Assembly: GCF_000143415.4 (NCBI RefSeq) | Contig: NW_003314262.1 | Span: 5,082,389-5,146,388 of the forward strand | Direction: 5' to 3' | Origin: Selaginella moellendorffii | Lineage: Eukaryota > Plantae > Lycopodiophyta | Length of the DNA stretch: 64,000 nucleotides | Shown: positions 4,925-26,095 of the stretch, piece after piece | How the letters are laid out: every line of letters starts with the position of its first letter | Position numbering within the stretch: the first letter of the stretch is position 1 | Made by a program: the position numbers and the translations under genes | Notes under the pieces: generated by a model | The model's database searches: none | Seen by the model: the letters and a program-made list of their open reading frames with translations, nothing else | Told to the model about the DNA's origin: nothing

Positions 4925-5086
4925 TATAACACATTTTATCTCTTTCCCCTTAAACCAATTTGAAAAAAAGTAATTATTTGATAAAAGAGCCTTTAGTGGC
5001 TATTTTATCCCTATTTATCCCTTAATATTCCAAAGAATAATAATAACAATATATTTAAATTTAATCATATGATTACATGTGTTACA
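4925..5086 (-). mobile_element. Degenerate solo LTR of the TRIM family at 22455-23116
   Basis: Matches the LTR at 22966-23116 (cccttaa-ccaatt-gaa, agagcc-ttagtggctattttatc-ctattta, acaatatat-taaat) and ends TACA. Confidence 0.7.
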
Positions 5087-6560
5087 AGTAAACTCCACTC
5101 AAATCTATGGAAAAATACACATCAAATACTAATTTTAGGACCTAGCATCGGTAGCTCATAGAAATCACAAAGGTAAATTCAATTTAGTTGGCAATATCGG
5201 ACCATGACTGTATAAAAGTTTACATGGTGAAGCATCAATAGAACTCTATAACTTAGTAATATATGCATACTAAAGAGATGACATCCCAATTCAAATACTG
5301 AAAATTAATATACTTAGCAATCATTCCTTTGAAGGTCCAAATGAACCATTTCATCAAACCATCTATTTATGGATGATAAACACTCATAAATCCCTAATTA
5401 AAACATTAAAATATGAAGTACCTCAACTATAAATATAGGACTATTATCTAAGAGAATTCACTTTAGATTAAATTGTTAGAATACCATCTGATTGAGGAGG
5501 AAATATCTAATAGTAGTCACAAATGCACTAGCAAGAGTATTAACTTCCATCGAGCAAGTCAAAAAAGCAATAATAATCTAGCAATCAACTATGAAAAAGA
5601 CCCATTAAATCAAATGCCATTAACTCAAATTGAAAGGAAATTATAATTAATTTCAATTGTCTTTTTAGAACACAAGAGGGAGTATTATAAATTTGGCATC
5701 AAATACAACTATGCATATACAAAACAATATTGCATTACATTTTTGGCCAATAGAAAGATCTAAGCAACTACTTAGCCATATAACGATGTCTAGGGTCATG
5801 GTAAGTAAAGAGAAAGTATAAAATAAAAATTGAAGGCACCACTAGTTATAAATGATCATCAAAATCAATCCTCACAAAATAAAGAAGATTATTCTTAAAG
5901 TGATATTGAAAATATAAATGCCAAAACAGGAAGTTATTAGCAAGTGATGCAAGATTTTTAAACCCATTATAAAGCATACAGACATACGACTTAACTTTTT
6001 GAGCTTCACAAACTTTGTCAAGCTTTTTCCATACCTTGTGGACATTAAATATCAAGGACAACAACCACCAATAGTATAAAATCCTTGTCCATTGATACTA
6101 GAATAGGAATAAAAGAAAAAAATGAAAAAGGAAAAGAAGTTCAAAAAAGGGTGTTAACATTAACTATAAAACTCCTTAGGCCATTGAAATTATATATTTA
6201 AAATTTTAGAGCTTACCAAACAATACAACCAACTAAGTTCTTTCACTTTAATAATGAAGTAATTATAATATGATCACCATTTAGTAATATCCAAGTGCTA
6301 TACAAATATATATATAAAGCTTCTCAAAACCCCAAATTATTGCTAAACATTTCTCTATTGTGTTTGCAATGTATAGTTGATATATATAATGGGAAAATGT
6401 TAATTAGCCATACTTATGCTCTCTTGCATCAACACACCCTTAAGACCGATATTAAAAGCATCCATATATAAAATGAAAAGTTGAGCGTAGTTAGAATACA
6501 TTAAAACTAGAGGAGTCTATAAGTGAGTAAAATTTTCATTTTATTTTAATCACTTAACCA

Positions 6561-8470
6561 CACCTAGCTTTGTACTTTCACAAAATGAGAGATAGAGCTA
6601 GCAGAGATTGCATTACTAATCCTCGTCTTCCATGATACAGGTACTCCCTGGACACCCAAACCATAGGAGGTGACATAGGAAATGCTTGGAGAAATCGTTT
6701 TAGTCGTGGTCAGTACCGGGTTACCGGGCGGATGATCCTATGCCTCGAACGAATGTACCGAAAATGGCCTAGTCGATCTGCTTAACCAAAAGTACCTGTG
6801 AGGGATAGCCGTGCCAAGGTGTGATACCTGGCTGTCAATACAAAACACCACACAATCCACTCCTACTTTCCCGCTGAATCGGATATGGACTTATGTGTGG
6901 CTTTTCAGGATTTTTGGCTACCCGAGATGACAGTGTACGTGAACACTGATGATTTTGTGGCTCCCGTCCCAGCTGTGCAGTAGTTTTTACTACTCTTAGC
7001 CGCCAAGGAAACAGAGCACTTACAAGAGATCTTTGTATATGAGAAGAAGATCGTGAATAAGCTGCTCATGGTGCCAAAATCAGAGGTGGTTGGCAAGAAC
7101 AAGTGTCAGCTCTGCCTCTTCCAGTAGGTTGAAACCAAAGAATGGTGGTGCCTGATCTGGACACTCCTTACCGATCGGGTGAATGATAACCAAGCTTGAC
7201 TACGACAGTGGATGGCAGATATGGAAAAAGAACTTGTTAATTTCTCCTCTGCCGAACCAAGGATTACTTGGAAAATGCTCCAATGGTCCCAAGAGTACAA
7301 TTGGGTCACAGGGTATAAAGGCTCATACAGGAAAGGCATTGATATGGGGAAACCACAGATTGACCTTAGTGATGGTTTTGAGTTCCTAAGACAAAATGCA
7401 TATTCACTCATGACTGGACTCATCCCGTCGCAGCTAGACACCTTGGAAGGAGAAAACATGGACCGTATTGATAATGGTCGTATCATGTTTGACCTGTTGG
7501 AGAATTTGAGTGGATAGAAGTTCCCCTTTGCCACCACACGAGTTCTTGATGCAACCTCCCACCGCCTTCCAGAACTGCATAAGTTCTGGATACTCATGAA
7601 TCCTCTAGGATGGATGTCCCCCTTGGAGGCATCCAACTAGATCCAGATGGCGGGTTTGTTACAACTGGATGCAATACAGTGGTCAAAATAGACACTAGAG
7701 GTGTCATACAGACATGCAACACTGGGGAACTATGCTTATAAACTAGCTATCCCATTCCAAAAGACCATGGATGAGGTTTTCAAGCTTGCTACTTTCCATG
7801 GATGCTATGATGGTGATGCCTTTTTGAATACAAAAAGCTGGAACCTATCACAAGGAGATCAACGTACTTGGAATCAGCTTCAACTGTACTACCACTGCGA
7901 TTGCCAGGGATGTGAAGGAGGAATTGTCTGGCTTGACTCCTCGTTCTGGTACATGCTTAACAACTAGGACAAGTACTGGCCAAACTCAAGCTTGATGTTG
8001 TTAGACTGCCTCACCATCTTCCTATCCCTACTCATGGCTAATCTGTAGGTGATCCTCAAGATAGCTGCCTTCCTTCAAATCCGAGAATGGATGCAAGCAG
8101 CTGCTATCGAGGTGGCAAAAAAGCCAGCTAACCCGGATCTAGAGTTCATCCCGCATGGACAGACTAAGATGAACATATGTAAGTTCATCTCTATCCAACA
8201 GTACAAGTCCCTAACGTCCTCATGATGTGATAGTAGTGAAAGTAATGGAGCTTTCTCACCGACACCATCCTCACAACACACGCCAGTAAGGTCTCGAGGC
8301 TTACCACTGAATCGGAAACGTGATCGTCCCGACGGACAAACGTCCATGGGACTGGCATCATAGGAGATGGGCACACCACTATCAATCTCCAAGACCTCTG
8401 AGGCCAATGCAAGCTCGAACAAACAGAAGCTACGCAAAAGGCTTGGTGCAAGAAAGTAGTGATAAATAAA
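6561..8470 (+). pseudogene. 3' part of a large unknown ORF of a Penelope-like element (upstream, 5'-truncated copy)
   Basis: One reading frame of ~630 codons (includes ORF fragments 7212-7517 and 7701-7967) broken only by scattered stops explainable as CAG/CAA/CGA/TGG transitions. Ends TAG TGA TAA at 8457-8465 followed by AATAAA. First ~225 bp are repeated at 19041-19251. Confidence 0.65.
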
Positions 8471-8502
8471 TTTATGTTTTCTTCTTCCATGATTGGTAGC
8501 TA

Positions 8503-10626
8503 ATGAAAATGCTCTCGTGATTGCTTCCATAGTGTACTTTACACTATATCCATCATTTGGCCATATAAAAATGGCTGGTCAAAGAGGGAACGGAGAGCAA
8601 ACGAAAATTCATACACCTCTGATATGTCACTGCCGGATTCGAAAAGATCAATATCCGCACTCTCATGAGGGAGTGCCTGGAAATGATTGGCTTAGACGTG
8701 GAACTTTTGGATCCCATTGTATTTGGCTGGAGGTATGAACCCCAAATAGAACACGACTTTTATAAACCCAAAGAGGTTTTTTGTAATTAGAACACTCTTG
8801 AGCCTCTTGTTTGTGAGTGCAAACAGTGGCTATGGGTGACCTACCTCGACGAGATTGGCCATGTGCGAACATTGGATCCAAAGATCCTTGGTTCATGCAT
8901 ACTTATGGCTATCATCGAGAAAGGCCTCAATCACATCACCCCAAAACCACTCCAAATAGCAAAAATTATTACTAAAATCTGTGAAGCTTGGGATCGGATT
9001 GCCAGTATAATCCCAAATGTTTACATCTGCAACTGGCCAAGTAACGAAGCTGCTGTTAAACAGCACATCAACTACCGGGTCCGAATGGTAGTACAAAATT
9101 CCCAAACCACCCCAACTGTAGAGGTGATGACCACCCCCGAGGCACAACGGCAACTGGAGTGGGTACATAAACACCTATACATCAGTGATGCTGATAAAGT
9201 GGCTAACACACCCACCTTCTTTTGCAAAATGTTAGCCCACGGGGAAGCACTTGGGTAGATGAATAGCGACGACTTCTCACTCTCTGTCTCGGAAAATAAT
9301 GTCCTTGAAACGCCCGAGAAAGTTGTAGAAAAACTGCTCAATGACCCATTTCTATAGGAATTTCTGCCTTAGCAACCAGATCTCCCCTACCTCATGGGAA
9401 TCTATAAAGCGCACAAGAACAAAATGCACTGGTTGACGAATGCGGATGGATATGTCTTCTCAGAAATCACAATCTGCCTAATAGCTATCCTAACAGGGAT
9501 ACAGGAGGCGCTACAAAATGTAGCTGATGATTTCTACACACAGGCAAATTTCTTTGGAGGAAAGATGAATGTGTGCTGGATCCTTGGATCCACACAAGAG
9601 TTCGCGATTAATCTCCTAAACAGGATCACCACGATCTACATGGGAGATATCACCAAGTGCTATGAGGCCATCCCCCTTGAGGGAGACCAAAGCCTTACGA
9701 TGGTTATGACACATTTAGTCAATTTAGCCTTCGTGCACCAAAATCACCTCAAAAAAGACTTTTTTTTTATTCAAAAAAAGAATGGTGAGCTTGAGGCCAA
9801 ATGGAAACCTCTATGCCACTCATCAATAAAGGCTACTAGAATGGATCCAACAAAAGTTATCGAGCCAAATAACTTTATCATCCAGAAAACATGTGTTTAG
9901 TTGGGCAATAGAGTATGGAGACAAGTCTGAAGAATTCCCATAGGCTTCTCATGGTCACTTTTGTGGTGTAACCTGTACCTTTTCTACTTCGAGTACAATT
10001 TTCTTACTCGACTTACACGTCTAAGCCAGTATAATTTACTTTGCCTCTTCAAGCACACTTTCAGGTACATGGACGATCTTGTTTCAATGAACAACCCCAT
10101 GATCCTCCGCTTCCTTGACCCTGATCAAGTCAAATCTGAAGGGAATCCGTTCTAGATATATCCACTATGATTCCTTGCCATGCAAAATGAGATGGACAAT
10201 CCATTCATAGATACGGACGGCTCGCTAGTGAACCTGTCTGCTCATTTCCTAAGCCTATAGATCCAGATCATACAGGTTGACAGTACTTTTTTAACCACAA
10301 AGTATGATGAATGCCGATCACTTCCATTCAAAGTCTCGCTGTATATTTATCGAGATTCAATTCGACCCATGATAAACTCATCCAAAGTAATCCTGGGACA
10401 AGTCTTTGCACTTTTCTATCTGATTAACACTGCCGGTGGTATCGTCCTTGAGATTGATAATCTCATTGAATGCTTCATGGAAAAAGGATTCCATTGCTAT
10501 GCATTAAGACAACTCATCCTTCGTGGTCTGGATTGCATTATTCTGACCAGCCCCTTATCACCAGTGCAAGTAGTGCTTGATATTCTCTTTGGCATTTGGA
10601 GAGAGCCAGCCAATCACCCACTATAG
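8503..10626 (+). mobile_element. Decayed Penelope-like retroelement reverse transcriptase (Chlamys/Naiad-type)
   Basis: ORF pieces 8836, 9394, 9961 and 10369 share one frame. Motifs CEC..GHVRTLD..KGLN, ADKVANT..FCK, LPYLMGIYKAHK, GDITKCYEAIP, WRQV*RIPIGFSWSLLWCNLYL, FRYMDD, IYPL, HFLSL, KYD..RSLPF match the PLE RT of the Naiad/Chlamys clade. No GIY-YIG endonuclease recognised. Confidence 0.85.
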
Positions 10627-10630
10627 CTCG

Positions 10631-13600
10631 ATGACTCAGCAAACTCAAGTTGAGGGCCAAGGATTCTATCTTTTAGACAATATTATCCATCATTTGGGCA
10701 TCATATTGAAACATAATAGATTTGGTGTCTATGCCCTTTTGGACTGTGAGCAACAAAAGAACAATTCCCCCAAACTTACCATGAAGTCTTTGGTTACGCT
10801 CTGAACAAAATGTGTAGGTGAACCATCAATTACATTTGTGTTTTTATTAGATAAATGGAAAATACAACACAAGTTCTGCTCACAGATCCCATGCCTAGAT
10901 AACAAAAAGGTTTCTTTAAAAATAATTTTTAAAGAAAATCTTGTTTACAGAAAACTTTGTTTTCCCATTGACAAGTTAATGGGACACATGAGTAGATGTG
11001 GCATGGTAAAAAACAAAAGCTTGGATTTTTCATAGAATCTTACGCTGAGAGATATTGTAGCGCACGTGGTTTTGACCCTTTATCCTACGGGGATTTACCA
11101 TAGGATAACACCACGAAGCGGAACCTAAACCCTCTTTGTGCCACGTGACAGATGCCACGTGTCACATGCCACGTGTCCATGCCACGTGTCCATAAGAACC
11201 CGAGGTTCAGGGCCTTGGGCCACTGAACGAACGAACGGTGCCAAACTCCCAAGCATAGAGCCAAGGAGTGATGGAACCGAACCACGGAGCAACTTTCGAG
11301 CATATAGCCCAAAGAGTGAAGGGACAAGGGCCCGGAGCGACTTGGAACAATCTTGGAGCAACCAGCATCCCAATGCCAGGACTAGCATGCAAAACGGAGC
11401 CAAACGGAGTCTGGTGCTATTTCGGCATACCGGTGGCCTAACGCGAGGATATGGGTACTCCACCAACTAGCATGGAATGGAACTTGGGCTTAGACCCAAG
11501 CCGGACGCAGAACAAGGACAGGCACGCAAGCGGGAGCTAGACTATGCCTCATGTTGGTCGGCCATGCCCGACCTACCCACTATCCCTACTATACATTTGG
11601 AACCCCCCATAGCCCCCCCCCCCCCTTGAGGAACACACGCTTTGGGCTTTCACCCCAAGCCTCCCATAGTATCAGGAGTTAGTCTCTGGGACAAGCTCAA
11701 AACTTACTAAATATGGAATGTCCCTAGATTGCGAATTTGGACACGGGACGAACACCATTGTGTTCAAGACGATTTCTACATTCCGTAGATATGCCAAATG
11801 AGCAAATCTGGACACTTTCCATAAATAGCATCTGGGACGAATTGAGACTAACACAAAGGGCATGATAGTGAGGGTGTTTGGCAGACACGGTAAGCTATCA
11901 TGTAGTGATATTGAGGGACCAATCTCAATACGCAAGGGTTCTTGTCAAGCTAGTGCAAGACAGAGCGAAAGAGAACTAACAAGCCGGGCCAAGTATGCTC
12001 AGCTAAATAGACACTTAGGAATTCCTTCCTTATGCTCATCCGGCCAAGTACAGATGCAAAGTCCAGTTTACTAACACTTGAACAAGAGGGACTAATAAAG
12101 GGTCAAGCAATACCGACCTCCTGCCATCGTGGCAGTAAGGTAAGAGTGTCCGTAAGGACTAGCCGACAGGTAACTTTCGATACCTGAAGTCACATTCGCG
12201 ACACTCTCCCCCCCTTGGGAAGATCGACGTCCTCGTCGATGCATACTCGAGTCTAGAATACCACCAAGGAAACAACTCCAGAAAAAGTTCACGGTACTCA
12301 CACTATGTGAGAAATGCACCAACTTAAATGAGTTAGGGGGTAACCTCTTTGTCTAACGCGGATGCGCTACTAGCTCAGACACCTTCCGGCCGTCGCCGAC
12401 AAGGAAATGACCAACAGAGTCAGCCACCCTTGTTGCTCTGGGTGTCACCCAGCTACAAAAGTGTGATACGCCCTGCCCGCAGGGACATAGAGAGAGAAGC
12501 CAGAGGCCCCAACCCTCCTGAGCAAAGAAACCAAACCCGTCGGTAAGGTTTGGATAGACTACTGTAAACAGGCAGTTAGAGTTGTTTACACGGTCACGCC
12601 CTTTCAACAGAATAAGGAACATCGACAGAGAGGCGGGTGATGTGACCAGTCGACTGTAGCTACCCCATGACTAGAGATTTCAACATGCACACGAAGTGCC
12701 GAAGCCAGTCTGCCTATACTGGCCCAAACTCAAAGATCAAGATATAGGGACTGTATCAAAGTCAGAGACAATGATATCTGAGAAGCTTAATTACTAGTGA
12801 TTATATCTTAGAGTAGAACACAAAAGTATTCTAAGCAAGTTATCATTCGATAAACCAGTAGTATTGTAGATAGGAACCACCAAGATCACTATAATTGGTA
12901 AACATAGGAATCACCATCCAACAACATTCAATAGCTAGTATATCATCAAGGAAACTCAATGATGAAACTTAACTACCGAAGATAGTAGACAGTAAGCCAA
13001 CAACTTACTAAAGAGAACTCAAAGAACACAAAGTATCATTGACTAACAAGCACAATGCTCGCGAATGTATCACCCGAAGGAAATAACATCCTAATCTATA
13101 AGAACTAACTCTGGCAATAATCAACAGAACAAAATGAATGTTGCAAAGCAAGCAAATATAGTGTTCATGCCAATCATTGCACTAGCCAATCCAGATAGAT
13201 CCCAGCCAATAACACCAAGGAACTCAAGTTGCCTAAGCAAGTGTCAGCAACATCCTACTGATGTCTCAATCCCAAGAGACCAAACCAGAGCAAACCACAA
13301 ATAACATGTGGTATTGCGAAAAGCCATAAGCTATCAAAGATAAAAACTAACCATCATGAAAGATCATCAATTATCCCATCAATAAAGAGATGCATAATCA
13401 CCATCTAAGAAGGAATCCACCATCCTGAGGAACAACAAACCATTCTATACCAACAATAATTAAGCAAAACCTTTTTGACAAGGATAATCAACTATCCCAG
13501 ATAATAGTCAATCATCACCAATGATTGCTAGATGCAAAAGCCAACTTCAACATCGAAGCTAATAAGCCAAAATGCTTTCCCCAACAACTTCTAACAAATG

Positions 13601-16600
13601 GAACAATGAGCATAAAACTCAAAGAACCAAAGCTTGAAGAAGCCTATAGCCAAGTCTTGCTTAATAATGATCACGAGTCTCATAGAAGCTAACTTCAATG
13701 CTAAAGAAGAAATTATGGTGCAACCCACAATGTCTTCTTCAACACATCCATAAGCCAAACTTCATAATGCCAAAGCTAATGAAGAGCATTTCTGCATCAA
13801 TCCAAAAGCTAAGCACAATGGAGCTATGCTCAACAAGTGATCACTAAACGATCCTCCATGAATCCATCTATAGCAAGACATAACTCACTTCATAACAAGC
13901 CCAAAAAGAATCATTAATGATTGCTATATCCCGAACTTAAATCTAGCAAGGACTCAACATTCTAATATCGATCACTAACTCTTCTTCTCGTATAGTTAGC
14001 ATAGTCCACGACTGAATCACTTTTCAAGGAAAAGCTAAAGCTCAACCCTCTACTAAATAATCTCGTCTAGAACACAACTAACTCAACTTGCCACTCAGTT
14101 CAACGTCAACACAGTTGCTAACTAGCAAATGCACGAATGCCAACAACACAAAGCTATAGCCAAATCATCAACACTATATTCATCAAAACTAATGAAACTC
14201 AATATCAATCCTTGGAAGGATATCTCATTTCACTCAGATCTCAATATCAACAATGTCAATGACAAAGCATCACTTCAATGCCATCAACACCAAAACAAAG
14301 CTAGAAGAAAGCATGAGTGAATCACCACTCAAAACTCTCTAGCAACCAAGCTAACCAAAGTCGAAGATACTTTAGTCCGTATCCAAGACCAATCCTCCAA
14401 TAAAACTCAGTTACAGATAACACTTCATCAAGGAGTGATTCACCACATCTAAGACTCAATGAAATCTAACACTACAGACTAAATGTAACCAAATGATATC
14501 AACAGAGGTAGAGTCGACATGCCAACATGAAAAACTCATGTAAGTCTAACGACACGATCCTCCGCAACACCATCCGGTAAAGCAAGCCCATCACTGCTAA
14601 ATCATCATCGAGCAAAGCAAGTGTTAACAGTCCTTGACGAAGTCTACAAGTAATCACTAGTTGCAAAGCAACTAACAATCACTCCTCAACTTACCTTCAC
14701 AAGACCCAAACACTAAACTCATACCATTGAATCATATACTTGTCCAACATGAACATAATACCCCAGGCACGAGATAAAGGTTCATGGACAAGCACAAATT
14801 AAATGACCACTCAAATCCAACTCAACCGTAATAAGCTCATCAACACGTCTAGTCAATAGCTCCGAGCATGCCTTGAAGAGGCTAGCTACACATGATCAAC
14901 ACTAAGTCGAAACTCAAGTGAAGACCATGAGATGGACTCATATCGGTACACAACCTCCTCATAGACAAAGCTATAGTACGGGTACCAACATCTCAACCTC
15001 AAACAACTAAGTTGGACATCACCATCCTTAGCCAAGGCGCAGGGCCACCAAGACCAAGTCAAGATCAGTGAGAGCTCACTACTCTTATAGAGTTTTAACA
15101 AAATGCAAGGTGCAACCCACCACCGAGCATAATGCTACAAAAGAAAAGCACAAGGGTCACCCTTCTTAGAAAAGTGCCACTTTTCTATATCAACTCTAGA
15201 CTCTATCCAACTCAATTGTTTTAGCCCCAAAAGTTAGCATCCCTTTCGGGCCGCATTATACAAACTACCTATCAAGGTCTAAGCTAACCAAAGTCAACTC
15301 CAACCCCTTCACTAGTTTGTACTGACTTACGAAAATGGAAAGGTTTTCGGACAAAGTGATCAACGGATCAGCTATTGGAAAAGCCTAAGAAAATTTGTGG
15401 AAAATTTCCATCCTAGAGAAAGAATGACTCTCAGTCCAGGATTGCAAACTTTCAAGACTCAACCAACTTCATCCTACAAACAACTTCACATAGGTTCACC
15501 TCGACACAGATTCTTATGACCCAATAGCATGCTTAAGCATCGAACATCTTTGCCCATATAACCGACATCGAACACTAACATCCGCAAAGTGCAAAATGAA
15601 CATCCAAGGCTTGATCACGAAGACCACATCTTCGGATATCCATATTGCACTAACACCCTTCTTCAATCACCTTCAAGATCCAATGTGAAGCCAAAACACT
15701 AACAAGAAAAATGACATGGAAAAATCAAGGTCCAAGGAAAATTCCTCATCACTTGAAATAACAATGCCACTTCCACTAACACAAGTGCTAGTGATGTCAA
15801 TGCCCCAACTATACATCTTCTCCATCCAACAATCTACTCCAAGTGCTAACGGATCAACCGACAAGCTATAGCAAATGAATGCTACAACCCTTTCCAACAC
15901 CTAACAGGCAAACTCAAGGAAACAAGGTACCAACTTAAGCTTAGCATAATGGACCACCATCGAGAATCTAGTCAAAGCTACTACAATGCTACTTCGTGCA
16001 AGTAGACTAGCTTCTCCATCAACCACTTTGGGGTTGATCATCATTTAACCAAGCAACTTCGTAAACACATTGCTCATTATCACATGGATATGATATAGAA
16101 ATCACAATAACTTGATCATCAATTGAGCAATACCACGAGTAATGCCAATGTCATTACTTTAAAGGTTTATGTGAGTATCAAGTGCTAACTCAATTTGACA
16201 AAATGCAACATAAATGCCACACTCCACCGATAGAGATTTACAACACCCAACATCACTAACTTTTGTTCACAACACGGACAAGCTCATGCCACTCTCTTTC
16301 CGACCAAACTCAACACTAATCCAACACCAAGCTACTCAAGGAGCAATAGCAAGGTTCCCCGAAAAAGAATTGAGCATTGCAACCCCAGTCTTCCATAGCA
16401 AGCCTAGACAAAATGGTATAACGTTTCACCGCTATCCATTCCACAACTCACCATTTGTAAGACCATCACTTCCAACATGCATCAAGATAGGGACTCTTGA
16501 TTGCATGATGTGAACACAAGTAATGAGTTAACACCTCGTTGCAGATCATCTCTCCAAGAAGAGAAAATGATTTATGTATTTGATCCTCCGTCCCCGATGA

Positions 16601-19251
16601 CTCTCTTTTCAGTTTCATCTTTGACTAAACCTCAAACTTGCTTTCGCACTGCCTTCAGTTCAATCCAAGAAAAGTTTATGAGAGAGCACGGCCATGACTA
16701 CTTGAACCAATAGACTAATCCCTATAGTCTTGATTGATCCACTTATAATCATGCCTAGGAAGGATCCACTAGTGCCGTGCTAAACAGCTACGGACCAGCC
16801 TATTTGCCACTCATAGCAAACCCAGGGAAGTTTGCGTTCACCCATGGTACATGGAACAACTCATGGATCCACCGATAGGCTAACATTAATCCTGCCAACT
16901 CAAAGTGTAACCTCAAGTTGCTAATGCGCCTCACTCACGAGCCCAAGCGCAAACTCGTGTAACATAACAACTTAGTCCACCCTATGAGCCCAAGAGCAAG
17001 CTCACATATTATGAAACACAGAGGTAACCAAAACCTATCCCAAGGAACCAATGCGAAGTCTTTGCACCAAAACGTGTACCCACTCGGATCATCGTTTTCA
17101 TCTCTGCGTATGCAACGAGACTAGTTGCCCAATCTCATTGGATAGTTCTCGCCGAGACTCTATCTCTGATACCAAATGTAGTGCACGTGGTTTTGACCCT
17201 TTATCCTACGGTGATTTACCATAGGATAACACCACAAAGCGGAACCTAAACCCTCTTTGTGCCACGTGACAGATGCCACGTGTCACATGCCACGTGTCCA
17301 TAGGAACCCGAGGTTCAGGGCCTTGGGCCACTGAACGAACGAACGGTGCCAAACTCCCAAGCATAGAGCCAAGGAGTGATGGAACCGAACCATGGAGCAA
17401 CTCTCGAGCATATAGCCCAAAGAGTGAAGGGACAAGGGCCCCAAGCGACTTGGAACAATCCTGGAGCAACCAGCATCCCAATGCCAGGACTAGCATGCAA
17501 AACGGAGCCAAACGGAGTCTGGCGCTATTTCGGCATACCGGTGGCCTAACGCGAGGATATGGGTACTCCACCAACTAGCATGGAATGGAACTTGGGCTTA
17601 GACTCAAGCCGGATGCAGAACAAGGACAGGCACGCAAGCGGGAGCTAGACTATGCCTCATGTTGGTCGGCCATGCCCGACCTACCCACTATCCCTACTAT
17701 ACATTTGGAACCCCCCATAGCCCCCCCCCCCTTGAGGAACACACGCTTTGGGCTTTCACCCCAAGCCTCCCTTAGTATCAGGAGTTAGTCTCTGGGACAA
17801 GCTCAAAACTTACTAAATATGGAATGTCCCTAGATTGCGAATTTGGACACGGGACGAACACCATTGTGTTCAAAACGATCTCTACATTCCATAGATATGC
17901 CAAATGAGCAAATCTGGACACTTTCCATAAATAGCATCTGGGACGAATTGAGACTAACACAAAGGGCATGATAGCGAGGGTGTTTGGCAGACACAGTAAG
18001 CTATCATGTAGCGATATTGAGGGACCAATCTCAATACGCAAGGGTTCTTGTCAAGCCAGTGCAAGACAGAGCAAAAGAGAACTAACAAGCCGGGCCAAGT
18101 ATGCTCAACTAAATAGACACTTAGGAATTCCTTCCTTATGCTCATCCGGCCAAGTACAGATGCAAAGTCCAGTTTACTAACACTTGAACAAGAGGGACTA
18201 ATAAAGGGTCCAGCAATACCGACCTCCTGCCATCGTGGCAGTAAGGTAAGAGTGTCCGTAAGGACTAGCCGACAGGTAACTTTCGATACCTGAAGTCACA
18301 TTCGCGACAGATATGCCATACGGATAAGCAAACCTAATTACAAGCTATAACTATTGGACTTCATGGCTGCGGGCACTGGATTTTCTCACATCGAAAGGTA
18401 TGAAGCGATGGGAAAAACCCTAACATTAGGGTTTCTTGCTTGCATCCATTGCCGCCGCATTCTCCAGGAGCACATCCACAAGCAGAGCAAGGTTGGGCTG
18501 TTGCAAGGCTATGTGCTAGCACAACCACGCATATTCCCTGCCCACTCCAGGATCAACAGCCACTTTATTGCACACTACAAGAATGAGTAGTGCCAACGAA
18601 GTGTTTGCTTGGGTATACCTCAAAACAAGCTTACACCCACCACTAAGGTCACAAGGAATCTCACTACTGCATTCCTGGCCACGCAAAAATGGGTAAAACA
18701 ATTTGGTTTCTTCATTTCTCTTCACCCCTGGCTTGTAGGAACTTTTTCTGGCTAGAACACCGGAACTTAGTGCCATGGCAGCACAAGGGGTGTTCATTGA
18801 CTCTGCCCAGGTAGTGCTTGTGAATCAACTATTCCAGTTTCTAATCATCCCCTTAGAAAAAAGACAGGATGACAGTGACTAGACTAGACGACGAGATCCA
18901 TAAGTCAATAGATAGCGATCAGATTGAGCATGTTCCCTAGTTCTAGTCTCTAGAAGTTACTTTTGATGTGTGGCCCGGGCATGTACCTAAGTACATTGGC
19001 TTGCGAGCATTAGTCGTGCAAATCTCAGTTCATTCTTGAAACCTAGCTTCCTACTTTCACAAAATGAGAGACAGAGCTAGCAAAGATTGCATTACTAATC
19101 CTCATACCCCCCAAACACCCAAACCATAGGAGGTGACATAAGAAATGCTTAGAGAAATCATTTTGGTCGTGGTCAGTACCAGGTTACCGAGCGGATGATC
19201 CTATGCCTCAGACGAATATATTGAAAATGGCCTAGTCGATTTGCTTAACCA
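10631..19251 (+). pseudogene. 5' part of the large second ORF of the Penelope-like element (10631-11055 joined to 18315-19251 across the LTR insertion)
   Basis: ATG 4 nt after the RT stop. Removing the LTR element and one GATAT copy gives continuous reading (..FFIESYAERYAIRISKPNYK..LDFMAAGTGFSH..). The end of this segment aligns to 6561-6788. Confidence 0.55.
11056..18309 (-). mobile_element. Intact non-autonomous LTR retrotransposon (family A, LARD-like, Ty3/Gypsy-derived)
   Basis: LTRs 11056-12203 and 17177-18309 (TG..CA, ~98% identical by eye). TSD GATAT at 11051-11055 and 18310-18314. tRNA-iMet PBS (TGGTATCAGAG on minus) at ~17164-17174. PPT at 12204-12218. The ~5 kb interior has no long ORF. 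Confidence 0.95.
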
Positions 19252-19254
19252 TAA

Positions 19255-20140
19255 AAGGCTTCTTTTAAACACCACTAGACACTTCTCATCCCAATCATGA
19301 CTAGTGGCATGTTTTTATATGTTTTGGAGAAAATTGGTCAAGGGAGTAGCAATCTCTAAGAAGTCCTTCATAAATCATTACAAAACTCTAGCCATACCAA
19401 GGAAATTATAGAGATCATACATAGTCAAAGTGTTCGATAGGTTGGGAAAGGCAAAATACTTCTCAAGGATTGACATAAGGTTAACATATTACCAAATTAG
19501 GGTAACAAGGGAAGATGTCAAGAAGACAACCTATCAAATAAGATATAGAAGCTTTGAGTTTTTGGTGATGCCCTTTTGACTATACAATTCATCGACAACA
19601 TTCTCGGCATTGATAAATTACATTTTTGTACCTTATTTGAATTACAATAAGACAATCTTTGCCTTGATATCCAATCTTGTAGTAATGAGAATAATAACCC
19701 TCCACCTTGTCATTCTTTTATTGGTTCAAATGAAGTTTCTTGGCCTCATTACCATCTCTATTCTTCGAGTCATGATATAGTAATGGTTTTTTCTTCACCA
19801 AATATGGAGCATTGGCTAGTTGGTCATTATATTAACTACCCTATAGACCATCCTATTGAACAAATTTGACTAATTTGATTGACAATTTTGGTGAAAAGAT
19901 TTGAGCCTTAGTGATAGCATGACCTATAAGTTTTATCACAAAAAGTCAATCTTTACCTTGTCCTCATAACAGTTGTAACCCCAACTTTGCCATGATTCCA
20001 ATCAACAATCAATTTCATAGCTATTATAAATATTTGGTGACAATTTTTATTCCATGATACTATAATCCTTGGCATATTTTACGTACCAATAGTATTCATA
20101 GACACAACATTGATTCAACCCTTGATGTGAAGCAGAAAAT
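19255..20140. mobile_element. Scrambled Ty3/Gypsy pol fragments (RT on +, RT/RNase H-like on -)
   Basis: Plus strand ~19430-19640 reads FDRLGKAKYFSRIDI..YYQIRV..EDVKKT..RYRSFEFLVMPF*L. Minus strand ~19255-19420 reads FLGMA..FMKDFLEIATPLTNFL. Confidence 0.7.
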
Positions 20141-20141
20141 T

Positions 20142-22454
20142 TGTAATACATGTTGTTTTCACCCTTTACCCTATAGTGTTTTACCAAAGGATAACCATAA
20201 AGTGGAACTCTAGCTTTTGGATACATAGGCCAAGGGTAGTGGAATAAAACTTGAGTTCAAGGCCTTGAGCTACTAAACTAAAAGACAGAGCTAAACTTTT
20301 GAGCATATAGACAAGGAGTGAAAGAGTTATAACACAAAATGACTTTTGAACATTCAACTCAAGGAGTGAAGGAATAGGAGTATGGAGCAACTCCCAAACG
20401 TACAACCTAAAGAGCGAAGAGATAGGGGCATGAAGTGATGTTAAAATAGTCTTAGAGCTTCTAACATCTCAATATCAACACTAGCACGCAAAATGGAGTT
20501 AAATGGAGTCTAGTGTTATTTTAGCATACTGGTGGTCTAATACAAGGATATAGATACTCCACTAGCTAACATGGTATGCTTATGCTTAAACCCAAGTCGA
20601 ATGTAGAATAAAGATAAGCATGCAAGTAGGAGCTAGACTATGCCTCAAGTTAGTCAGCCATGCCTGACCTACCTATTATCCCTACTATACATTTAGAACC
20701 CCTCATAATCCTATTATAAGTAATTAAAGAAAATTACCTGAAAAATGATCCATAAAGTTCAAATATAGAGAGAAAAGGCCCATAAATAAAAGTGCATCCT
20801 CTTTTTCAAACAATTAAGGGATTTAGGAACTTAGGGTTAAAAATCCTCGGGTTTAAATAGTACTAGACTAGGTGACCTTTCGAGAAGTCCAAACTCAAGA
20901 GGTTACATTTCGTATCAGAAGGGGTCTCTCGCGTCCAACTTTATTGGTTGGCTAGAGGAATTACATCACATGTTGATTGACATTTAGCAAATCCAGTTTG
21001 CTCCTGTTAGGCTTAACCTGAAGAGTGGGGTGTCAAGAGAGTATGGCTCTCGAGAGAGCTACAACTCTTAGCTTCCATTCATAAGGGCGTGAATTTGTAG
21101 GGAAGCATAGTGAATTGTAAACAACCAAAAACTTAAGAGATAATACATAAAGTTCAAATATAGAGTGCACCCTTTATTTCAATCAGTTAAGGGTTGTATG
21201 ATACTTAGGATTAAATGTCCTTAGATTTGAATAGTATTAGGTTGGGTGACTTTCTGGGAAGTCCAAATGCAGGAGCTTACACCTACCCTATAGTGTTTTA
21301 TAATAGAATAATCATGAAACGAAACTTTAACCCTTGGACACATGGGCCAAGGGTAATGGAGCAAAACCCAGGTTTAGGGCTTTGAGCCATGGAACGAAGA
21401 CACAGAGCAAAACTCTCAAGTATATAACTAAGGAGTGAAAGAATTAGAGTAAAGATGACTTATAAGCATTCAACTTAAGGAGTGAAGGAGCAAGAATATG
21501 GAGTGACTTTTGAACATACAACCTAAAGAATGAAGGGATAGAGGCACGGAACTAAAGCATGGATAACTCATGAGCATTCAACTTAAGGAGTGGAGCAAGA
21601 GTATGGAGTGACTCTCAAATATACAACCCAAGGAGCAAAGGGATAAAGGCATGGAGTGATGTTGAAATAGTCCTAGAGTTTCCAACATCCTAATGTCAAG
21701 ACCAACATGTAAAATAGAACCAAATGGACTTTGGTGCTATTTTAACATATTAGAAGCCTAATGCAAGGATATAAGTACTCCACTAGATAGTATAGTATGG
21801 AGATTGGGGCATAGACCCAAGCCAAATATAGAACAAAAACAAGTACTCAAGCAGAAGCTATATTATACCTCAAGTTGGTCAACCATGCCCAACCTACCCA
21901 CTATCACTATTATATATTTGGAAGCCCCATGGCCCTACCCTATGGTGTTTTATCATAGGATAATTATGATGTGGAACTTTAACCTTTGGACACGTAGGCC
22001 AAGGGTTGTTGAGCAAAACTTGAGTTTAGGGCGTTAAAACACTTAAAGAAGAGATAGAGACATACTCCCAAGCATACAATCAAAGAGCAAATAAATTAGA
22101 GTATGGATGACTTCTAAGTTCAATTTAAAGAGGGAAGGAGTAGAAGCATGGATTAACTCCCCAACATATAGCCCAATGAACAAAGGAATAGGAGCATATA
22201 ATGATGTTGAAATAGTCCTAAAGCTTTTAACACCCCAATGTCAGAACTAACACACAAAATAGAACCAAATAGAGTTTAGTGTTATTTCAATATATTGGCG
22301 GCCTAACACAAGGATATGAATACCCCACTAGCTAGCATAATATAGAGCTTGGGCTTAAACCCAAGCTGAATACAAAACAAGGACAAGTATGCAAGTGGGT
22401 GCTAGACTATGCCTCAAGTTAGTCAATCATGCCTGACCTACCCACTATCTCTAT
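20142..22454. repeat. Three tandem ~520-650 bp units derived from a family-A-like LTR segment
   Basis: Units start ccctat(a/g)gtgtttta at ~20170, ~21287 and ~21938 and end ..cctacccactatc..tatacattt. The first begins with a TGTA LTR-end-like sequence. Degenerate match to 11056-11610. Confidence 0.75.
20715..21281 (+). mobile_element. Old degenerate Cassandra-type TRIM
   Basis: LTRs ~20715-20907 and ~21116-21281, decayed 5S core (tagtactagactaggtgacc..gaagtcc), PBS relic tcgtatcaga, TSD CCTAT/CCTAC. Collinear with 24446-25038. Confidence 0.8.
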
Positions 22455-23139: not shown

Positions 23140-26095
23140 GGACATGGCTAAAGACGTCTAAAACTATGTAAAGACATGTCCAATATATTAGTAGGTCAAA
23201 GCCATGATTAAGGCAAGTGGGGGCTTATTACAAAGCCTCCCAATTCTAGATCTTCCATAAAAATGTCTTATCACGGGATTCCCCCCAAGTGAGGGGTTGA
23301 TGCAATATTCATGATGGTGGACTGATTTTCAAAAATAGCATATTTTATACCCACCACAATGGAAGTGGATGCAAAAAGTGTGGCAAAGCTATTTTTTTAA
23401 CAAGTGGTTTGAGTGCGGGGAAGGCCAAAAGAGATTATCTCAAATCGAGATAATATTTTCACTAGGTATTGGGTATTAAGTCAAGTTTAATGGCATTAAC
23501 ACTTCTTGATAGATGGACAAATGGAAAGGGTGAATAGATAATTAGAGGATTATTTGCAATGTTATATCTTCGAAGACCAGACTTATTGGGTTTATTTAGA
23601 ACTTGTGAAAATGTGTTATAACAATTCACCACATTTAAATATTGGGGTGAGTCCATGGGAAGTCATCAATGGGTGAACTATTGAAGGTCCTATGAAACTC
23701 GGCATAGCTGAGTATCATGGAGAGTTACTTGCAATGGAGGTGTTCACGGCAGAAAGACTCAACATTTAGAATCTAATGAGGGATTCCTTGGAATGGGCTT
23801 AACAAAGGCAAATTAAATACGTAAACCAAAAATGCTGGGATGTAAAGTTTTAACTTAGGGATAAAGTGTAGCTGAACACTAAGAACCTAAGGTTACCAAG
23901 TGGGATCAACTGGAAGTTAACCTAAAGATAAAATGCATGTATTTCTGGAAATGAACTGATCTTGAGTTCCTTAAACAGGTTTATGGGGCCTTATGAAATT
24001 CAGGCTTGAATTAGTAAAATGGCTTACCGCCTCTGACTTCCTCAGAAGATAGGGAAGATGCGCCCTATGTTTCACGTGAACTTACTTAAGCCGTACTTTC
24101 TTTAAGGACCCACTTCTCAAGGACCAAGTAAGACATATACCTAAAGTTATCCAAGGGAAAGAAGAATACGAAGTCAAGGCCATCCTCAATGTGTGCAAGA
24201 GCAAGTGATAAGAACGAAAGGTGAGGGAGTTCCATGTGAAGTGGAAAAGATTTTCACACTATGAAGTAACATGGGAATTGAAGGAAAACCTTACAAATGC
24301 ATGAGATCTAGTGAAGGAATTTTTACAAAGTAGAACTATATGTACTTATGCAAAATTTAATTAAAGAATCTATTTGAGAAATTGAGCAATGTCATATGTT
24401 GGGACCCAAAGGCATGCCGAAAGTAAGCTAATTAGCATATGTTAGTGTAAGCAACCAAAGGGAACGATTCGAGAGACGATCCATGGGGTTCAAATATAGA
24501 GGGAAAGGGCCCATGAACAAGAGTGCACCCCCTTTTCCAATCGGTCAAGGGTCTTGGGATAGTTGGAGTTAAGCGTCTTTGGGTTTGAGTAGTACTGGGA
24601 TAGGTGACCTCCCGGGAAGTCCAAACTCAGGAGCTTACATTTGGTATCAGAGGGGTCTCGGGTCCGACTCTGTTGGTTGGCTAGGGGAATCACACCACAT
24701 GTTGATTGACATCTGGCTAGTCCAGTTTGCTCCCACTGGGCTCGACCCGAGGGGTAGGGTGTCAAGAGAGCGAGGCTCTCGGGAGAGTTGCGGCTCTCAG
24801 CTTCCGTTCACGAGGGCGTGAACTTGCAGGGAAGCGTGGTGGATTGTAAGCAACCAAAGGGAACGATTCGAGAGATGATCCATGGGGTTCAAATATAGAG
24901 GGAAAGGGCCCATGAACAAGAGTGCACCCCCTTTTCCAATTGGACAAGGGTCTTGGGATAGTTGGAGTTAAGCGTCTTTGGGTTTGAGTAGTACTGGGAT
25001 GGGTGACCTCCCGGGAAGTCCAAACTCAGGAGCTTACAGTTAGCTAGGTTGACCAAGCATAAAGAATTATACCTGACTCCTTATGGGGATGTCAAATCCG
25101 TAAACGTATTCTACAAAGGTTGGGTTTGAGTCCCAACCCTTTAGTAAAGCAAGGTTGGGTTCAAATCCCTACCCTATACTCCCCAAAGTGTTGTAAACTA
25201 AAGGATCCACAAAAGCATGACCAAAATGATAAAGAGTTCATCAGACAAGACTGAGTCTGAGATCAAGTCCAAGACTGATTTTGAGACCGAGTCCGTGATC
25301 CGAGATTAAGTTCGAAACCAAGTCTAAGACCGAGTCCGAAATCGAGTCTGAAACAAAGTCTGAAGTTGGGTCCAAGATCAAGTATAAGACCAAGTCTGAG
25401 GTCACGTCTGAAATTGAGTTTGAGATTGAGTTCGAGATTGAGTCTAAATACTAATATAGGTAGTGGAATGAAAGCCCAAAGCGTGTGTCTCCCAGAGGGG
25501 GTTGTAAAGTATAGTAAAGATAATGAGGTCCAAGAATCAATTTTCAAAGAACTCTCACTTGAGGTTGAGCCTGAGGCTTATAAGCCTTGGGTGGGAATGA
25601 GTATGGATTCAGGTGGTGCTAAAGGGGCTACCCAAGGAAGTTCTTAAGAGCAACTCCCACTTCTAGAAGGGAAACCAATTGTCGTACTCCTGGCTCATGT
25701 GGAGTGGTGCCCCATTTGAGTACTTTGCAACTCATTGCCCCTCACCCTTTTTAGAGGCTTGGGCCTTTCCTTTGGGATGGAAGTGGGGTAATAGGGGTAC
25801 CCATTAAGCCATAGGGTTTCCCTTTAGTGTCCCAAAGCAAGTGTTGTAGCCAAAGTTTAAGATTTAGAGGGTTCCATGATCAAATTTTGTTGTACCAAGA
25901 GATATTAGGAACCTAGAGGTTTGGTATACTTGGTTGCTTGTGTTTGCAGGGAGTGTAACCAAACCTTAAGTCTAGTTTAACCTAGGGAGGGGGATTGGGA
26001 GAGAACTTCAGAATTCATAGATGGATGGCTAAACCTCTATTGTTTGTGTAGTGAGTTGTTAAAACCAAGTAAAACCAAGTAAAAGCTAGTACAAT
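23140..26095 (+). mobile_element. Decayed chromovirus (Ty3/Gypsy) 3' relic: integrase, chromodomain, 3' UTR and probable LTR
   Basis: YVKTCP, GLLQSLP, VD*FSKIAYFIP, GRPKEIISNRD, GPYEI, FHVNLLKPY, chromodomain EEYEVKAIL..FHVKWKRF..TWELKENL. Degenerate hexamer repeats at 25250-25450 resemble family-B LTRs. Right boundary uncertain. Confidence 0.75.
24446..25038 (+). mobile_element. Intact Cassandra-type TRIM with 5S rRNA-derived promoter segment in both LTRs
   Basis: 194-bp LTRs 24446-24639 and 24845-25038 (4 mismatches counted). TSD GTTAG. PBS TGGTATCAGAG at 24642. PPT before 24845. LTR core GAGTTAAGCGT..GAGTAGTACTGGGATGGGTGACCTCCCGGGAAGTCC matches the plant 5S rRNA A-box/IE/C-box region. Confidence 0.95.

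What the first reader, a model, noticed from the sequence alone, without database searches (positions are those of the whole stretch)
6561..19251. Penelope-like retroelement with no visible endonuclease and a ~1000-codon unknown ORF downstream of RT, in partial tandem
Seen: a Chlamys/Naiad-type PLE RT frame (8503-10626) is followed 4 nt later by an ATG at 10631. Removing the LTR element at the GATAT TSD joins 10631-11055 to 18315-19251. The last ~210 bp of that join are ~90% identical to 6561-6788, and that frame then runs ~630 more codons to stops plus AATAAA at ~8460. Established: PLEs often insert as a 5'-truncated copy followed by a full copy (pseudo-LTR), and Chlamys elements normally carry an N-terminal GIY-YIG. 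Inference: the unit is RT followed by a large second ORF with Cys motifs (CIHC, HCDCQGC). The window would hold a 1.9-kb upstream pseudo-LTR plus a second, 3'-broken copy. The alternative order (ORF1 then RT, head-to-tail or circularly permuted) is also possible. I cannot assign the second protein to any family, so it is the best candidate for a novel component here.
Basis: partly seen in the sequence, partly recalled or inferred. Interest (0 to 1): 0.85.

Follow-up and report, generated by a model that had tools for sequence, protein, structure and literature searches.

The report
Dead copy of known spikemoss PLE-X
This is a long-dead, stray copy of a published endonuclease-free Penelope-like retrotransposon of the spikemoss Selaginella ("PLE-X"). 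Its live copies sit in the 28S rRNA genes. The "unknown second ORF" is the family's known N-terminal extension, which lies in front of the reverse transcriptase, not behind it.

Summary
The sequence features are real, but the proposed architecture is wrong and the element is already described.

**What the window holds**
- A 232-bp 5'-truncated leader copy at 6562-6793.
- One complete 5.2-kb unit at 6794-19256.
- An LTR retrotransposon splitting that unit at 11056-18310, with a GATAT target-site duplication.

**Comparison with intact copies.** Intact copies in Selaginella moellendorffii (84-87% identical) form head-to-tail arrays with a 5237-bp period inside 28S rDNA. They give the gene order 5'UTR, ORFX (about 512-522 codons), RT (about 710 codons), then a 1.4-kb non-coding 3' region.

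**ORFX**
- It is homologous to the N-terminal extension fused to the RT in a second S. moellendorffii family and in Chara braunii proteins.
- It carries the CxCX1-8C motif.
- Together with the CxC motif, the absence of GIY-YIG and the 28S targeting, this matches the "PLE-X" group of Craig et al. 2021 (PMC8557442).

**The stretch after the RT is not coding**
- It has indels between copies and no codon-position bias.
- "CIHC" reads CIRRRR in intact copies.

**The window copy is a fossil outside rDNA**
- It has 25 in-frame stops.
- Its changes are mostly C>T/G>A.

**Weak new leads**
- The CxCX1-8C core may be a GRF-like zinc ribbon.
- Every copy ends in a 17-nt 28S-like tail.

The parts
6562..6793 (+). 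Upstream 5'-truncated leader copy (pseudo-LTR): the last 232 bp of the unit, ending in the 28S-like tail TCTGCTTAACCAAAAGT (6777-6793).
   Evidence: It matches 19041-19256. It matches L001 13135-13366 at 93.5-93.9% identity. The 5' junction with an unrelated repeat shows ACCT microhomology.
6794..19256 (+). One full-length PLE-X unit, 5.2 kb without the LTR insert.
   Evidence: It is collinear with the intact 5237-bp unit L001 8130-13366 over its whole length. It has the same 3' terminus as the copies in L001, L003, L007 and L008.
6927..8465 (+). ORFX, the N-terminal-extension ORF, decayed. The open frame is equivalent to L001 8233-9801 and starts at 6897; the first ATG is at 6927. It has 12 in-frame stops and no indels.
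   Evidence: The intact 522-codon ORF is in L001. Differences fall 49/50/107 by codon position, p=1e-7. It is homologous to the N-terminal parts of P0003, P0045 and P0039.
7782..8156 (+). Conserved core of ORFX (ORFX residues 296-420). It has the CxCX1-8C motif (CDCQGC, 7896-7913) followed by a helical hairpin. It may be a GRF-like zinc ribbon.
   Evidence: A core HMM hits window pieces at E 4e-18 and 2e-9. The AF2 model has pLDDT 61. Weak fold matches point to the GRF zinc fingers of NEIL3 and APE2. Pfam Zn_ribbon_GRF_2 scores E 6e-4 in the Chara homologue.
8466..8520 (+). Spacer between ORFX and the RT frame, with stops in the ORFX and RT frames, AATAAA and a pyrimidine tract. It is probably the 3' part of an intron whose acceptor AG is at 8531-8532.
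   Evidence: The RT-frame residues upstream of the first Met are conserved with P0003 and Chara P0056.
8521..10653 (+). PLE reverse-transcriptase ORF, decayed, with 13 in-frame stops and no indels. CxC motif (CEC) at 8812-8820; YMDD at 10066-10077.
   Evidence: It is 83% identical to the intact 662-aa P0001. RVT_1 hits P0001 below threshold. Differences fall 88/60/200 by codon position, p=3e-21.
10654..11055 (+). First part of the non-coding 3' region, cut by the LTR insertion.
   Evidence: It is 75% identical to L001, with one 13-nt and three 1-nt indels. There is no long ORF here in intact copies.
11056..18310 (+). Nested LTR retrotransposon, not part of the PLE. LTRs are about 1.15 kb. TSD GATAT at 11051-11055 and 18311-18315.
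   Evidence: The empty site is seen in the paralogous copy L007.
18316..19256 (+). Rest of the non-coding 3' region. It includes a non-conserved 145-codon 'ORFa' (ATG at 18363) and the terminal 28S-like tail TTTGCTTAACCATAAAA (19240-19256).
   Evidence: ORFa shows no codon-position bias (33/24/23, p=0.32; 10 synonymous and 46 non-synonymous codon changes). The tail is shared by all copies.

Best explanation
**What it is.** The locus is a fossil, non-rDNA copy of the endonuclease-free Chlamys-clade Penelope-like retrotransposon family 'PLE-X' of Selaginella. Live copies of this family form head-to-tail arrays at one site of the 28S rRNA gene, antisense to the rRNA.

**Unit layout.** One unit reads as follows.
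- A short 5' UTR.
- ORFX, about 520 codons: the family's N-terminal extension, carrying a CxCX1-8C zinc motif.
- A short spacer or intron.
- The RT, about 710 codons, with a CxC motif and no GIY-YIG.
- A 1.4-kb non-coding 3' region ending in a 17-nt tail that copies the 28S target.

**Layout in the window.** It shows the usual PLE arrangement: a 5'-truncated leader (232 bp) followed by one full unit. That unit was later split by an LTR retrotransposon and inactivated by 25 mostly C>T/G>A stop mutations.

**Inferred, not shown.**
- ORFX and the RT are joined into one protein by splicing.
- Lacking a nuclease, the element primes reverse transcription from pre-existing 3'-OH ends that pair with its 28S-like tail.
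- The ORFX zinc module helps hold the DNA.
For: **Collinearity**
- The window is collinear with the intact S. moellendorffii unit at 84-87% identity.
- Arrays have a 5237-bp period.

**28S context**
- 28S rRNA flanks the arrays on both sides, on the opposite strand, at about position 1140-1150 of the Rfam LSU model.
- All six copy ends examined share the same 3' terminus and tail. The 5' ends vary.

**Coding evidence**
- ORFX and the RT show third-position-biased divergence and zero indels.
- The post-RT region has 7 indels and no codon bias.

**ORFX homology**
- ORFX is homologous to the N-terminal part of fused N-extension+RT proteins of S. moellendorffii (phmmer 2e-22) and Chara braunii (6e-14 and 2e-7).

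**Other family features**
- No nuclease domain is found.
- The RT-frame residues upstream of the first Met are conserved across families (3e-8 and 4e-7).
- The published description of PLE-X matches on distribution, the CxC motif, the lack of EN, the CxCX1-8C extension and the 28S target.
Against: - No canonical hammerhead ribozyme was found by Rfam or by a core-motif scan in the window, the intact unit or two relatives. The paper says these families have them.
- The window copy is not in 28S and has no recognisable 28S flank.
- The splice joining ORFX to the RT has no RNA evidence.
- No canonical GT donor near the ORFX stop is phase-compatible with the best acceptor.
- I could not compare directly with the published PLE-X consensus sequences, because the supplement is not held.
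- I built no labelled RT tree.
Confidence: 0.9

Rival explanations
1. The unit is RT followed by a ~1000-codon second ORF that starts at 10631, crosses the LTR insertion and continues into 6561-8460. The window would then hold a 1.9-kb pseudo-LTR plus a 3'-broken second copy.
For: The frame at 18351-18587 and the 6636-8360 frame look open-ish in the window. JGI gene models P0091 and P0092 splice small exons from the post-RT region into ORFX.
Against: - Intact copies have no long ORF between the RT stop and ORFX.
- That region has frame-breaking indels between copies and no codon-position bias.
- The RT ORF runs 24 nt past the window's premature stop (10624-10626), across the proposed ATG at 10631.
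- All copies end at the position equivalent to 19256, so that point is the terminus and not a break.
- In Chara and in a second Selaginella family the homologous domain is N-terminal to the RT in the same gene model.
Confidence: 0.03
2. The element and gene order are as in the best explanation, but ORFX is a separate ORF1-type protein with its own stop and the AATAAA at 8461-8470. The RT is then translated on its own from the Met at about 8665, with no fusion.
For: - ORFX has its own ATG and stop codon.
- The spacer has stops in the ORFX and RT frames and carries AATAAA.
- NCBI models call the RT alone from that Met (P0001).
- No clean phase-compatible GT donor lies near the ORFX end.
Against: - The 38 codons upstream of the Met in the RT frame are conserved with P0003 and Chara P0056 and have no ATG of their own.
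- A strong acceptor (pyrimidine tract plus AG) lies 12 nt into the open RT frame.
- Gene models in two other families fuse the two parts across an intron.
- The paper infers an intron.
Confidence: 0.2
3. ORFX is a captured host gene or a piece of another transposon that lies next to the RT by chance.
For: It has no Pfam family and no homologues outside Selaginella and Chara.
Against: - It recurs with the RT at a fixed 5237-bp period in at least three arrays.
- It occurs together with the RT in the two old dispersed copies that extend far enough 5' to reach it, the window and L007.
- Every detectable homologue is fused or adjacent to a PLE RT.
Confidence: 0.02

Closest known systems
PLE-X families of the Chlamys clade of Penelope-like elements (Craig, Yushenova, Rodriguez & Arkhipova 2021, Mol Biol Evol 38:5005; PMC8557442), described from S. 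moellendorffii, S. tamariscina and Chara braunii
   Same: - The hosts are Selaginella and Chara.
- The RT has the CxC motif and there is no GIY-YIG.
- The N-terminal extension carries CxCX1-8C and is separated from the RT by a presumed intron.
- Intact copies insert at one site of 28S rDNA.
- Copies form partial tandems (pseudo-LTRs).
   Different: - The window copy is a dead, dispersed copy outside rDNA.
- I found no canonical hammerhead ribozyme in this family.
- The Selaginella extension carries about 300 extra N-terminal residues that the Chara proteins lack.
Athena/Coprina endonuclease-deficient PLEs (Gladyshev & Arkhipova 2007, cited in PMC8557442)
   Same: They lack an endonuclease. Their 3' end carries a short stretch matching the attachment site, which suggests priming by base-pairing to an exposed DNA end.
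   Different: - Those elements attach to telomeric overhangs through reverse-complement telomeric repeats next to hammerheads.
- Here there are no telomeric repeats, the matching stretch is 28S sequence, and the RT belongs to the Chlamys side (CxC motif).
R2/R1-type rDNA-specific non-LTR retrotransposons
   Same: They also insert site-specifically into the 28S gene and show variable 5' junctions.
   Different: - They have a different RT clade and encode their own endonuclease.
- They insert in the sense orientation, whereas this element lies antisense to the rRNA and forms multi-unit tandem arrays.
GRF-type zinc ribbons (Pfam PF06839/PF23549; APE2, NEIL3, TOP3A)
   Same: The domain is small and Cys-rich with three strands. 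The Chara homologues have a G-R-x-[FY]-x-x-C spacing. The best, though weak, fold matches are to the GRF fingers of NEIL3 and APE2.
   Different: - All scores are below the usual thresholds (Z 3.4-4.0; Pfam 19.9 bits against a cut-off of 27).
- The GR motif is absent in the Selaginella sequences.
- The model has low confidence (pLDDT 61).

Membership tests
Penelope-like elements, Chlamys clade, PLE-X type | PLE-type RT: DK(G) motif, LPxxxGxxKxHK motif 1/2, YxDD, and nearest relatives that are PLE RTs | tested here: met
   - Window pieces and the intact P0001 show ADKAA, LPYLMGIYKAHK, DITKCYEAIP, GIPMGFSCSP and YMDD.
- The best library hits are S. moellendorffii and Chara braunii proteins with the PLE-X architecture.
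- RVT_1 scores below threshold.
- No labelled phylogeny was built.
Penelope-like elements, Chlamys clade, PLE-X type | CxC motif just N-terminal of the RT core | tested here: met
   VCECKQW at window 8809-8829, and VCECKRW in P0001.
Penelope-like elements, Chlamys clade, PLE-X type | No GIY-YIG endonuclease | tested here: met
   Pfam finds none in the window pieces or in the intact ORFX, ORFa or RT. No GIY...YIG pattern occurs in any relative.
Penelope-like elements, Chlamys clade, PLE-X type | Unique N-terminal extension with a conserved CxCX1-8C motif | tested here: met
   CDCQGC at window 7896-7913. ORFX is homologous to the extension of P0003 (CVCSCFNERPGC), P0045 (CACLGC) and P0039 (CSCKPSDEDKDC).
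Penelope-like elements, Chlamys clade, PLE-X type | Extension joined to the RT across an intron | tested here: inconclusive
   - The two parts are in different frames with stops between them.
- The start of the RT ORF is conserved and has no ATG.
- There is a good acceptor.
- Gene models in L002 and L005 splice the two parts.
Penelope-like elements, Chlamys clade, PLE-X type | Targeted insertion at one site of the 28S rRNA gene (spikemoss families) | tested here: met
   This is met for the family. The arrays in L001, L003 and L004 are flanked by 28S at the same site. It is not met for the window copy or for L007 and L008, which are dispersed relics.
Penelope-like elements, Chlamys clade, PLE-X type | Partial tandem or pseudo-LTR organisation with variable 5' truncation | tested here: met
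   Leader copies start at unit positions of about 5006 (window), 4830 (L004) and 1856 (L003), each followed by full units. L007 and L008 are single 5'-truncated copies.
Penelope-like elements, Chlamys clade, PLE-X type | Canonical hammerhead ribozyme | tested here: inconclusive
   - Rfam found no hammerhead at E up to 5-10 in window 5000-21000, L001 7000-13600, L002 or L005.
- The CUGANGA...GAAA scan gave two hits without a convincing helix II.
- The relatives meant as a positive control also gave nothing, so the method may miss minimal PLE hammerheads.
Penelope-like elements, Chlamys clade, PLE-X type | Insertion-in-fingers domain between RT motifs A and B | tested here: inconclusive
   About 90 residues separate DITKCYEAIP from GIPMGFSCSP in P0001, which is long enough for an IFD. 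No alignment to TERT or Naiad IFDs was made.
GRF-type zinc ribbon (PF06839/PF23549) | Significant profile or fold match with four zinc ligands and the GRxF motif | tested here: inconclusive
   - Pfam Zn_ribbon_GRF_2 scores E 6e-4 (19.9 bits, cut-off 27) in one of seven members.
- VIA scores Z 4.0 for NEIL3 GRF and Z 3.4 for APE2 GRF.
- Foldseek gives E >= 0.4.
- The Atlas search gives TM 0.37-0.45.
- The model has pLDDT 61.
- The GR motif is present only in the Chara sequences.
Athena/Coprina telomeric EN-deficient PLEs | Reverse-complement telomeric repeats at the 3' end | tested here: not met
   There are no telomeric repeats in or near the element. The 3' end is the 28S-like tail instead.

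The most novel reading that the evidence does not exclude
The conserved CxCX1-8C core of the PLE-X N-terminal extension is a GRF-type single-stranded-DNA-binding zinc ribbon. It would work together with the 17-nt 28S-matching tail that every copy carries at its 3' end. The two would let an endonuclease-free Penelope-like element capture pre-existing 3'-OH ends in the 28S gene (nicks, stalled forks or R-loops) and prime reverse transcription there. That would answer the question Craig et al. left open, of how this group integrates without a nuclease.
Probability: 0.22. Interest if true: 0.6.

Novelty: already known. Interest (0 to 1): 0.2.

Why it matters
As a discovery it matters little. The family, its missing endonuclease, its odd N-terminal extension and its 28S target were all published in 2021, and this copy is a fossil.

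Three points may still be useful.
- **Annotation.** The unit order is ORFX then RT. The 3' 1.4 kb is non-coding, and the S. moellendorffii gene models for this element are fragmentary or chimeric.
- **Purifying selection.** ORFX has clearly been under purifying selection, so it is a real protein.
- **How PLE-X may integrate without a nuclease.** There are two modest leads: a possible GRF-like ssDNA-binding zinc ribbon, and a target-matching 3' tail kept even by dispersed copies.

Tried and rejected
- **Pfam on ten window ORF pieces:** nothing, because the copy is too decayed.
- **PDB sequence searches** with an RT piece, the intact RT and the ORFX profile: nothing usable.
- **Word-based protein search with the 91-aa motif piece:** no candidates. 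With intact ORFX and with a five-sequence profile it returned only S. moellendorffii gene models.
- **ESM Atlas feature search of ORFX:** no usable hit.
- **AF2 of the whole of ORFX:** pLDDT 32, unusable.
- **Hammerhead searches:** negative.
- **Apparent Rfam extension of 28S into the terminal 230 bp:** checked and rejected. Beyond the 17-nt tail there is no similarity to the 28S on the other side of the site.
- **28S remnant in the window's 3' flank:** only about 13 of 21 matches, so not claimed.
- **Shared CTTAACCA / CCACTTGGAG strings** between the window's 5'-flank repeat and the 28S target: noted, but the 3' flank does not continue that repeat, so no secondary-target claim is made.
- **ORFa (145 codons) as a coding exon:** rejected, because it shows no codon bias.
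- **Paper supplement with the PLE-X consensus sequences:** not held.
- **Steps deliberately not taken:** Exon-joining was only enumerated for frame compatibility inside one script.


Full report
**1. What is in the window.**

- Three-frame translation shows a stop-riddled frame from about 6897 to 8465. A second stop-riddled frame runs from about 8521 to 10653 and carries reverse-transcriptase motifs: LPYLMGIYKAHK, DITKCYEAIP, IPIGFSWS and YMDD.
- An LTR retrotransposon occupies 11056-18310. Its LTRs are about 1.15 kb and 92-98% identical, and it is flanked by GATAT on both sides.
- 6562-6791 is repeated at 19041-19254. Identity is 83% with one 16-nt gap.
- No other copy lies in the window.
- Pfam sees nothing in the broken pieces. 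Rfam finds no rRNA and no ribozyme.

**2. Intact relatives fix the architecture.**

An exhaustive HMMER search with the 175-aa RT piece found an intact 662-aa protein, 83% identical, in Selaginella moellendorffii. It also found a 967-aa S. moellendorffii protein and many Chara braunii proteins.

The locus of the 662-aa protein (L001, GL377659.1) holds a head-to-tail array with a 5237-bp period. The window aligns to it end to end:
- 6562-11040 matches L001 7898-12392.
- 18319-19259 matches L001 12412-13369. This confirms that removing the LTR element restores the sequence.

Two other loci give the same unit:
- L004 has a leader copy followed by at least three full units.
- L003 has a similar array plus an older, diverged copy.

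The unit (L001 8130-13366) contains:
- ORFX, 522 codons (8233-9801).
- A 55-nt spacer.
- The RT ORF, 710 codons (9857-11989).
- 1.38 kb with no ORF longer than 145 codons.

In window coordinates the layout is:
- leader copy, 6562-6793
- full unit, 6794-19256
- ORFX, 6897/6927-8465
- RT, 8521-10653
- 3' region, 10654-11055 plus 18316-19256

All six copy ends examined stop at the same terminus: two live arrays, one old 28S copy, and the three dispersed copies L007, L008 and the window. The position near 19256 is therefore the element's true 3' end, not a break. The 5' ends vary, at unit positions of about 5006, 4830, 2481, 1856 and 905. This is the classical PLE pattern of a 5'-truncated copy in front of a full one, but the leader here is 232 bp, not 1.9 kb.

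**3. What is coding.**

Between the window copy and L001:
- ORFX and the RT have no indels at all across 3.7 kb.
- Their substitutions concentrate at third codon positions. ORFX shows 49/50/107 (p=1e-7) and the RT shows 88/60/200 (p=3e-21).
- The post-RT region has seven indels.
- Its 145-codon ORFa shows no position bias (33/24/23) and 46 non-synonymous against 10 synonymous codon changes.

ORFX is therefore a real, selected protein, and the stretch after the RT is non-coding.

- The ATG at 10631 sits out of frame inside the last RT codons. The window's stop at 10624-10626 is a mutated Gln codon, and intact copies end ...DDSANSS*.
- 'CIHC' reads CIRRRR in intact copies.
- The window copy has 12 stops in ORFX and 13 in the RT. 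Its differences are dominated by C>T/G>A, as expected for an old, methylated repeat.

**4. What ORFX is.**

Window pieces of ORFX align collinearly with the N-terminal 300 residues of the 967-aa S. moellendorffii protein P0003. Intact ORFX matches several proteins:
- P0003, phmmer E 2e-22
- Chara P0045, E 6e-14
- Chara P0039, E 2e-7

In each of them the homologous part lies N-terminal to the RT.

The shared core is about 125 residues (ORFX 296-420). It contains C-x-C-x(1-8)-C followed by W-x-D, an aromatic helix and a long helical hairpin. Gene models in L002 and L005 place an intron between this part and the RT exon.

All of the following match the 'PLE-X' type that Craig et al. 2021 described from Chara braunii and two spikemosses:
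- the hosts
- the CxC motif before the RT
- the absence of GIY-YIG
- the extension with CxCX1-8C
- the presumed intron

**5. The 28S connection.**

In L001, L003 and L004 the arrays are flanked by 28S rRNA on the opposite strand, with 5.8S and 18S beyond in L001. The interruption is at about position 1140-1150 of the Rfam LSU model. The junction sequences show two things:
- The 28S antisense strand reads ...CCAGTTCTGC TTACCAAAAAT GGCCCACTTGG...
- Every unit ends ...GTCGA TCTGCTTAACCAAAAAT. This is 17 nt identical to the target apart from one extra A.

The tail is present at every internal unit junction and also in the three dispersed copies, so it belongs to the template and not to the flank. 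Beyond the tail there is no 28S similarity.

The window copy itself is not in rDNA:
- Its 5' flank is a fragment of another repeat, joined with ACCT microhomology.
- Its 3' flank is unrelated sequence followed by gypsy-type debris.

**6. How it probably works (inference).**

*Expression.* Five observations bear on it:
- ORFX has an ATG (window 6927).
- The RT frame has none until 48 codons in.
- The 38 codons before that Met are conserved with P0003 (E 3e-8) and Chara P0056 (E 4e-7).
- The spacer has stops in the ORFX and RT frames.
- A pyrimidine tract plus AG lies 12 nt into the RT frame.

Splicing that fuses ORFX to the RT is therefore the most likely route (about 70%). A separate ORF1 plus an internally initiated RT is the alternative. 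Phase-compatible GT donors for that acceptor lie well inside ORFX (L001 9385, 9448 and 9529); gene model P0095 uses 9385. A GC donor at 9745 is also compatible. I could not decide among these without RNA data.

*Integration.* There is no nuclease, every copy has a target-matching 3' tail, and the 5' junctions are variable and microhomologous. The simplest model is priming from pre-existing 3'-OH ends that pair with the last 8 or so nt of the tail. The extra A is always copied, so priming must start downstream of it. This parallels how telomeric EN-deficient PLEs use reverse-complement telomeric repeats.

**7. Structure of ORFX.**

- AF2 on the whole protein failed (pLDDT 32).
- The core alone gave a modest model (pLDDT 61): three short strands around the Cys motif, then a helical hairpin.

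Four weak, independent pointers agree on a GRF- or recombinase-type zinc ribbon:

| Method | Result |
|---|---|
| VIA-align | NEIL3 GRF fingers, Z 4.0, rmsd 2.1 Å over 40 residues; APE2 Zf-GRF, Z 3.4 |
| Foldseek | Large-serine-recombinase zinc ribbon and NEIL3 GRF, E 0.4-4 |
| ESM Atlas | Clusters with Zn_ribbon_recom or Zn_ribbon_GRF, TM 0.37-0.45 |
| Pfam | Zn_ribbon_GRF_2, E 6e-4, in Chara P0045 residues 73-95 (GRPYLKCACLGCEKNFTWFDH) |

All are below the usual thresholds, and the GR motif is missing in the Selaginella sequences. I treat this as a lead at roughly 35% for the fold assignment, not as a result.

**8. Discrepancies and limits.**

- No canonical hammerhead was found in this family or in two relatives, although the paper reports them for these families. 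Minimal PLE hammerheads may escape the Rfam models.
- I could not align to the published consensus.
- I built no reference RT tree.

**9. Verdict.**

The element is an already described family, and this locus is a dead, dispersed copy of it. Interest is low.

The earlier scan note on a telomere-attached PLE in this genome concerns a different element. It only supplied the lead that the genome is a Selaginella. The scan index holds no prior note on this family.

Noticed in passing
window 11056-18310: A fairly young LTR retrotransposon sits inside the PLE. Its LTRs are about 1.15 kb and 92-98% identical, and it has a GATAT TSD. Copies of the same family lie next to PLE-X copies in L007 (92% identical) and appear as fragments in L001 and L003.
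   Followed up: partly
window 6520-6565, 56859-57081, 62587-62877; L001 21524-21816: A repeat family of about 290 bp. In S. moellendorffii it also lies about 240 bp from the 5S gene in the rDNA spacer. It contains CTTAACCA...CCACTTGGAG, strings also found at the PLE-X 28S target. The PLE leader copy abuts it, and this may be chance.
   Followed up: partly
window 24567-24639 and 24966-25038: Two short stretches are 84-88% similar to both the 5S rRNA region (L001 21180-21237) and an ITS-side segment (L001 14950-15019). They may be a 5S-derived SINE or rDNA debris. Rfam reports no 5S at its gathering score.
   Followed up: no
window 19412-19576 and 20360-20707: A gypsy-type RT fragment and an LTR fragment lie directly downstream of the PLE 3' end. 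The locus is a mosaic of transposon debris.
   Followed up: no
L001 13367-21286 (GL377659.1): The S. moellendorffii rDNA unit carries the 5S gene about 4.2 kb upstream of 18S on the same strand (a linked arrangement). The PLE-X arrays lie antisense to the rRNA.
   Followed up: partly
L003 18963-20852: An older PLE-X copy, 70-75% identical to the live family, still abuts a decayed 28S fragment and keeps the same tail. This site has therefore been used over a long period.
   Followed up: partly
L002 10200-13930 (GL377639.1): A second, divergent S. moellendorffii PLE-X family (P0003; RT 42% identical) lies at a locus with no rRNA nearby. Its unspliced extension ORF ends in an RGG-rich tail.
   Followed up: partly
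L001, L003, L004 gene models: The NCBI/JGI gene models for this element (SELMODRAFT_427747, 421256, 430131 and others) disagree with each other. They splice out conserved parts of ORFX or add non-coding 'exons', so they are unreliable annotations.
   Followed up: partly
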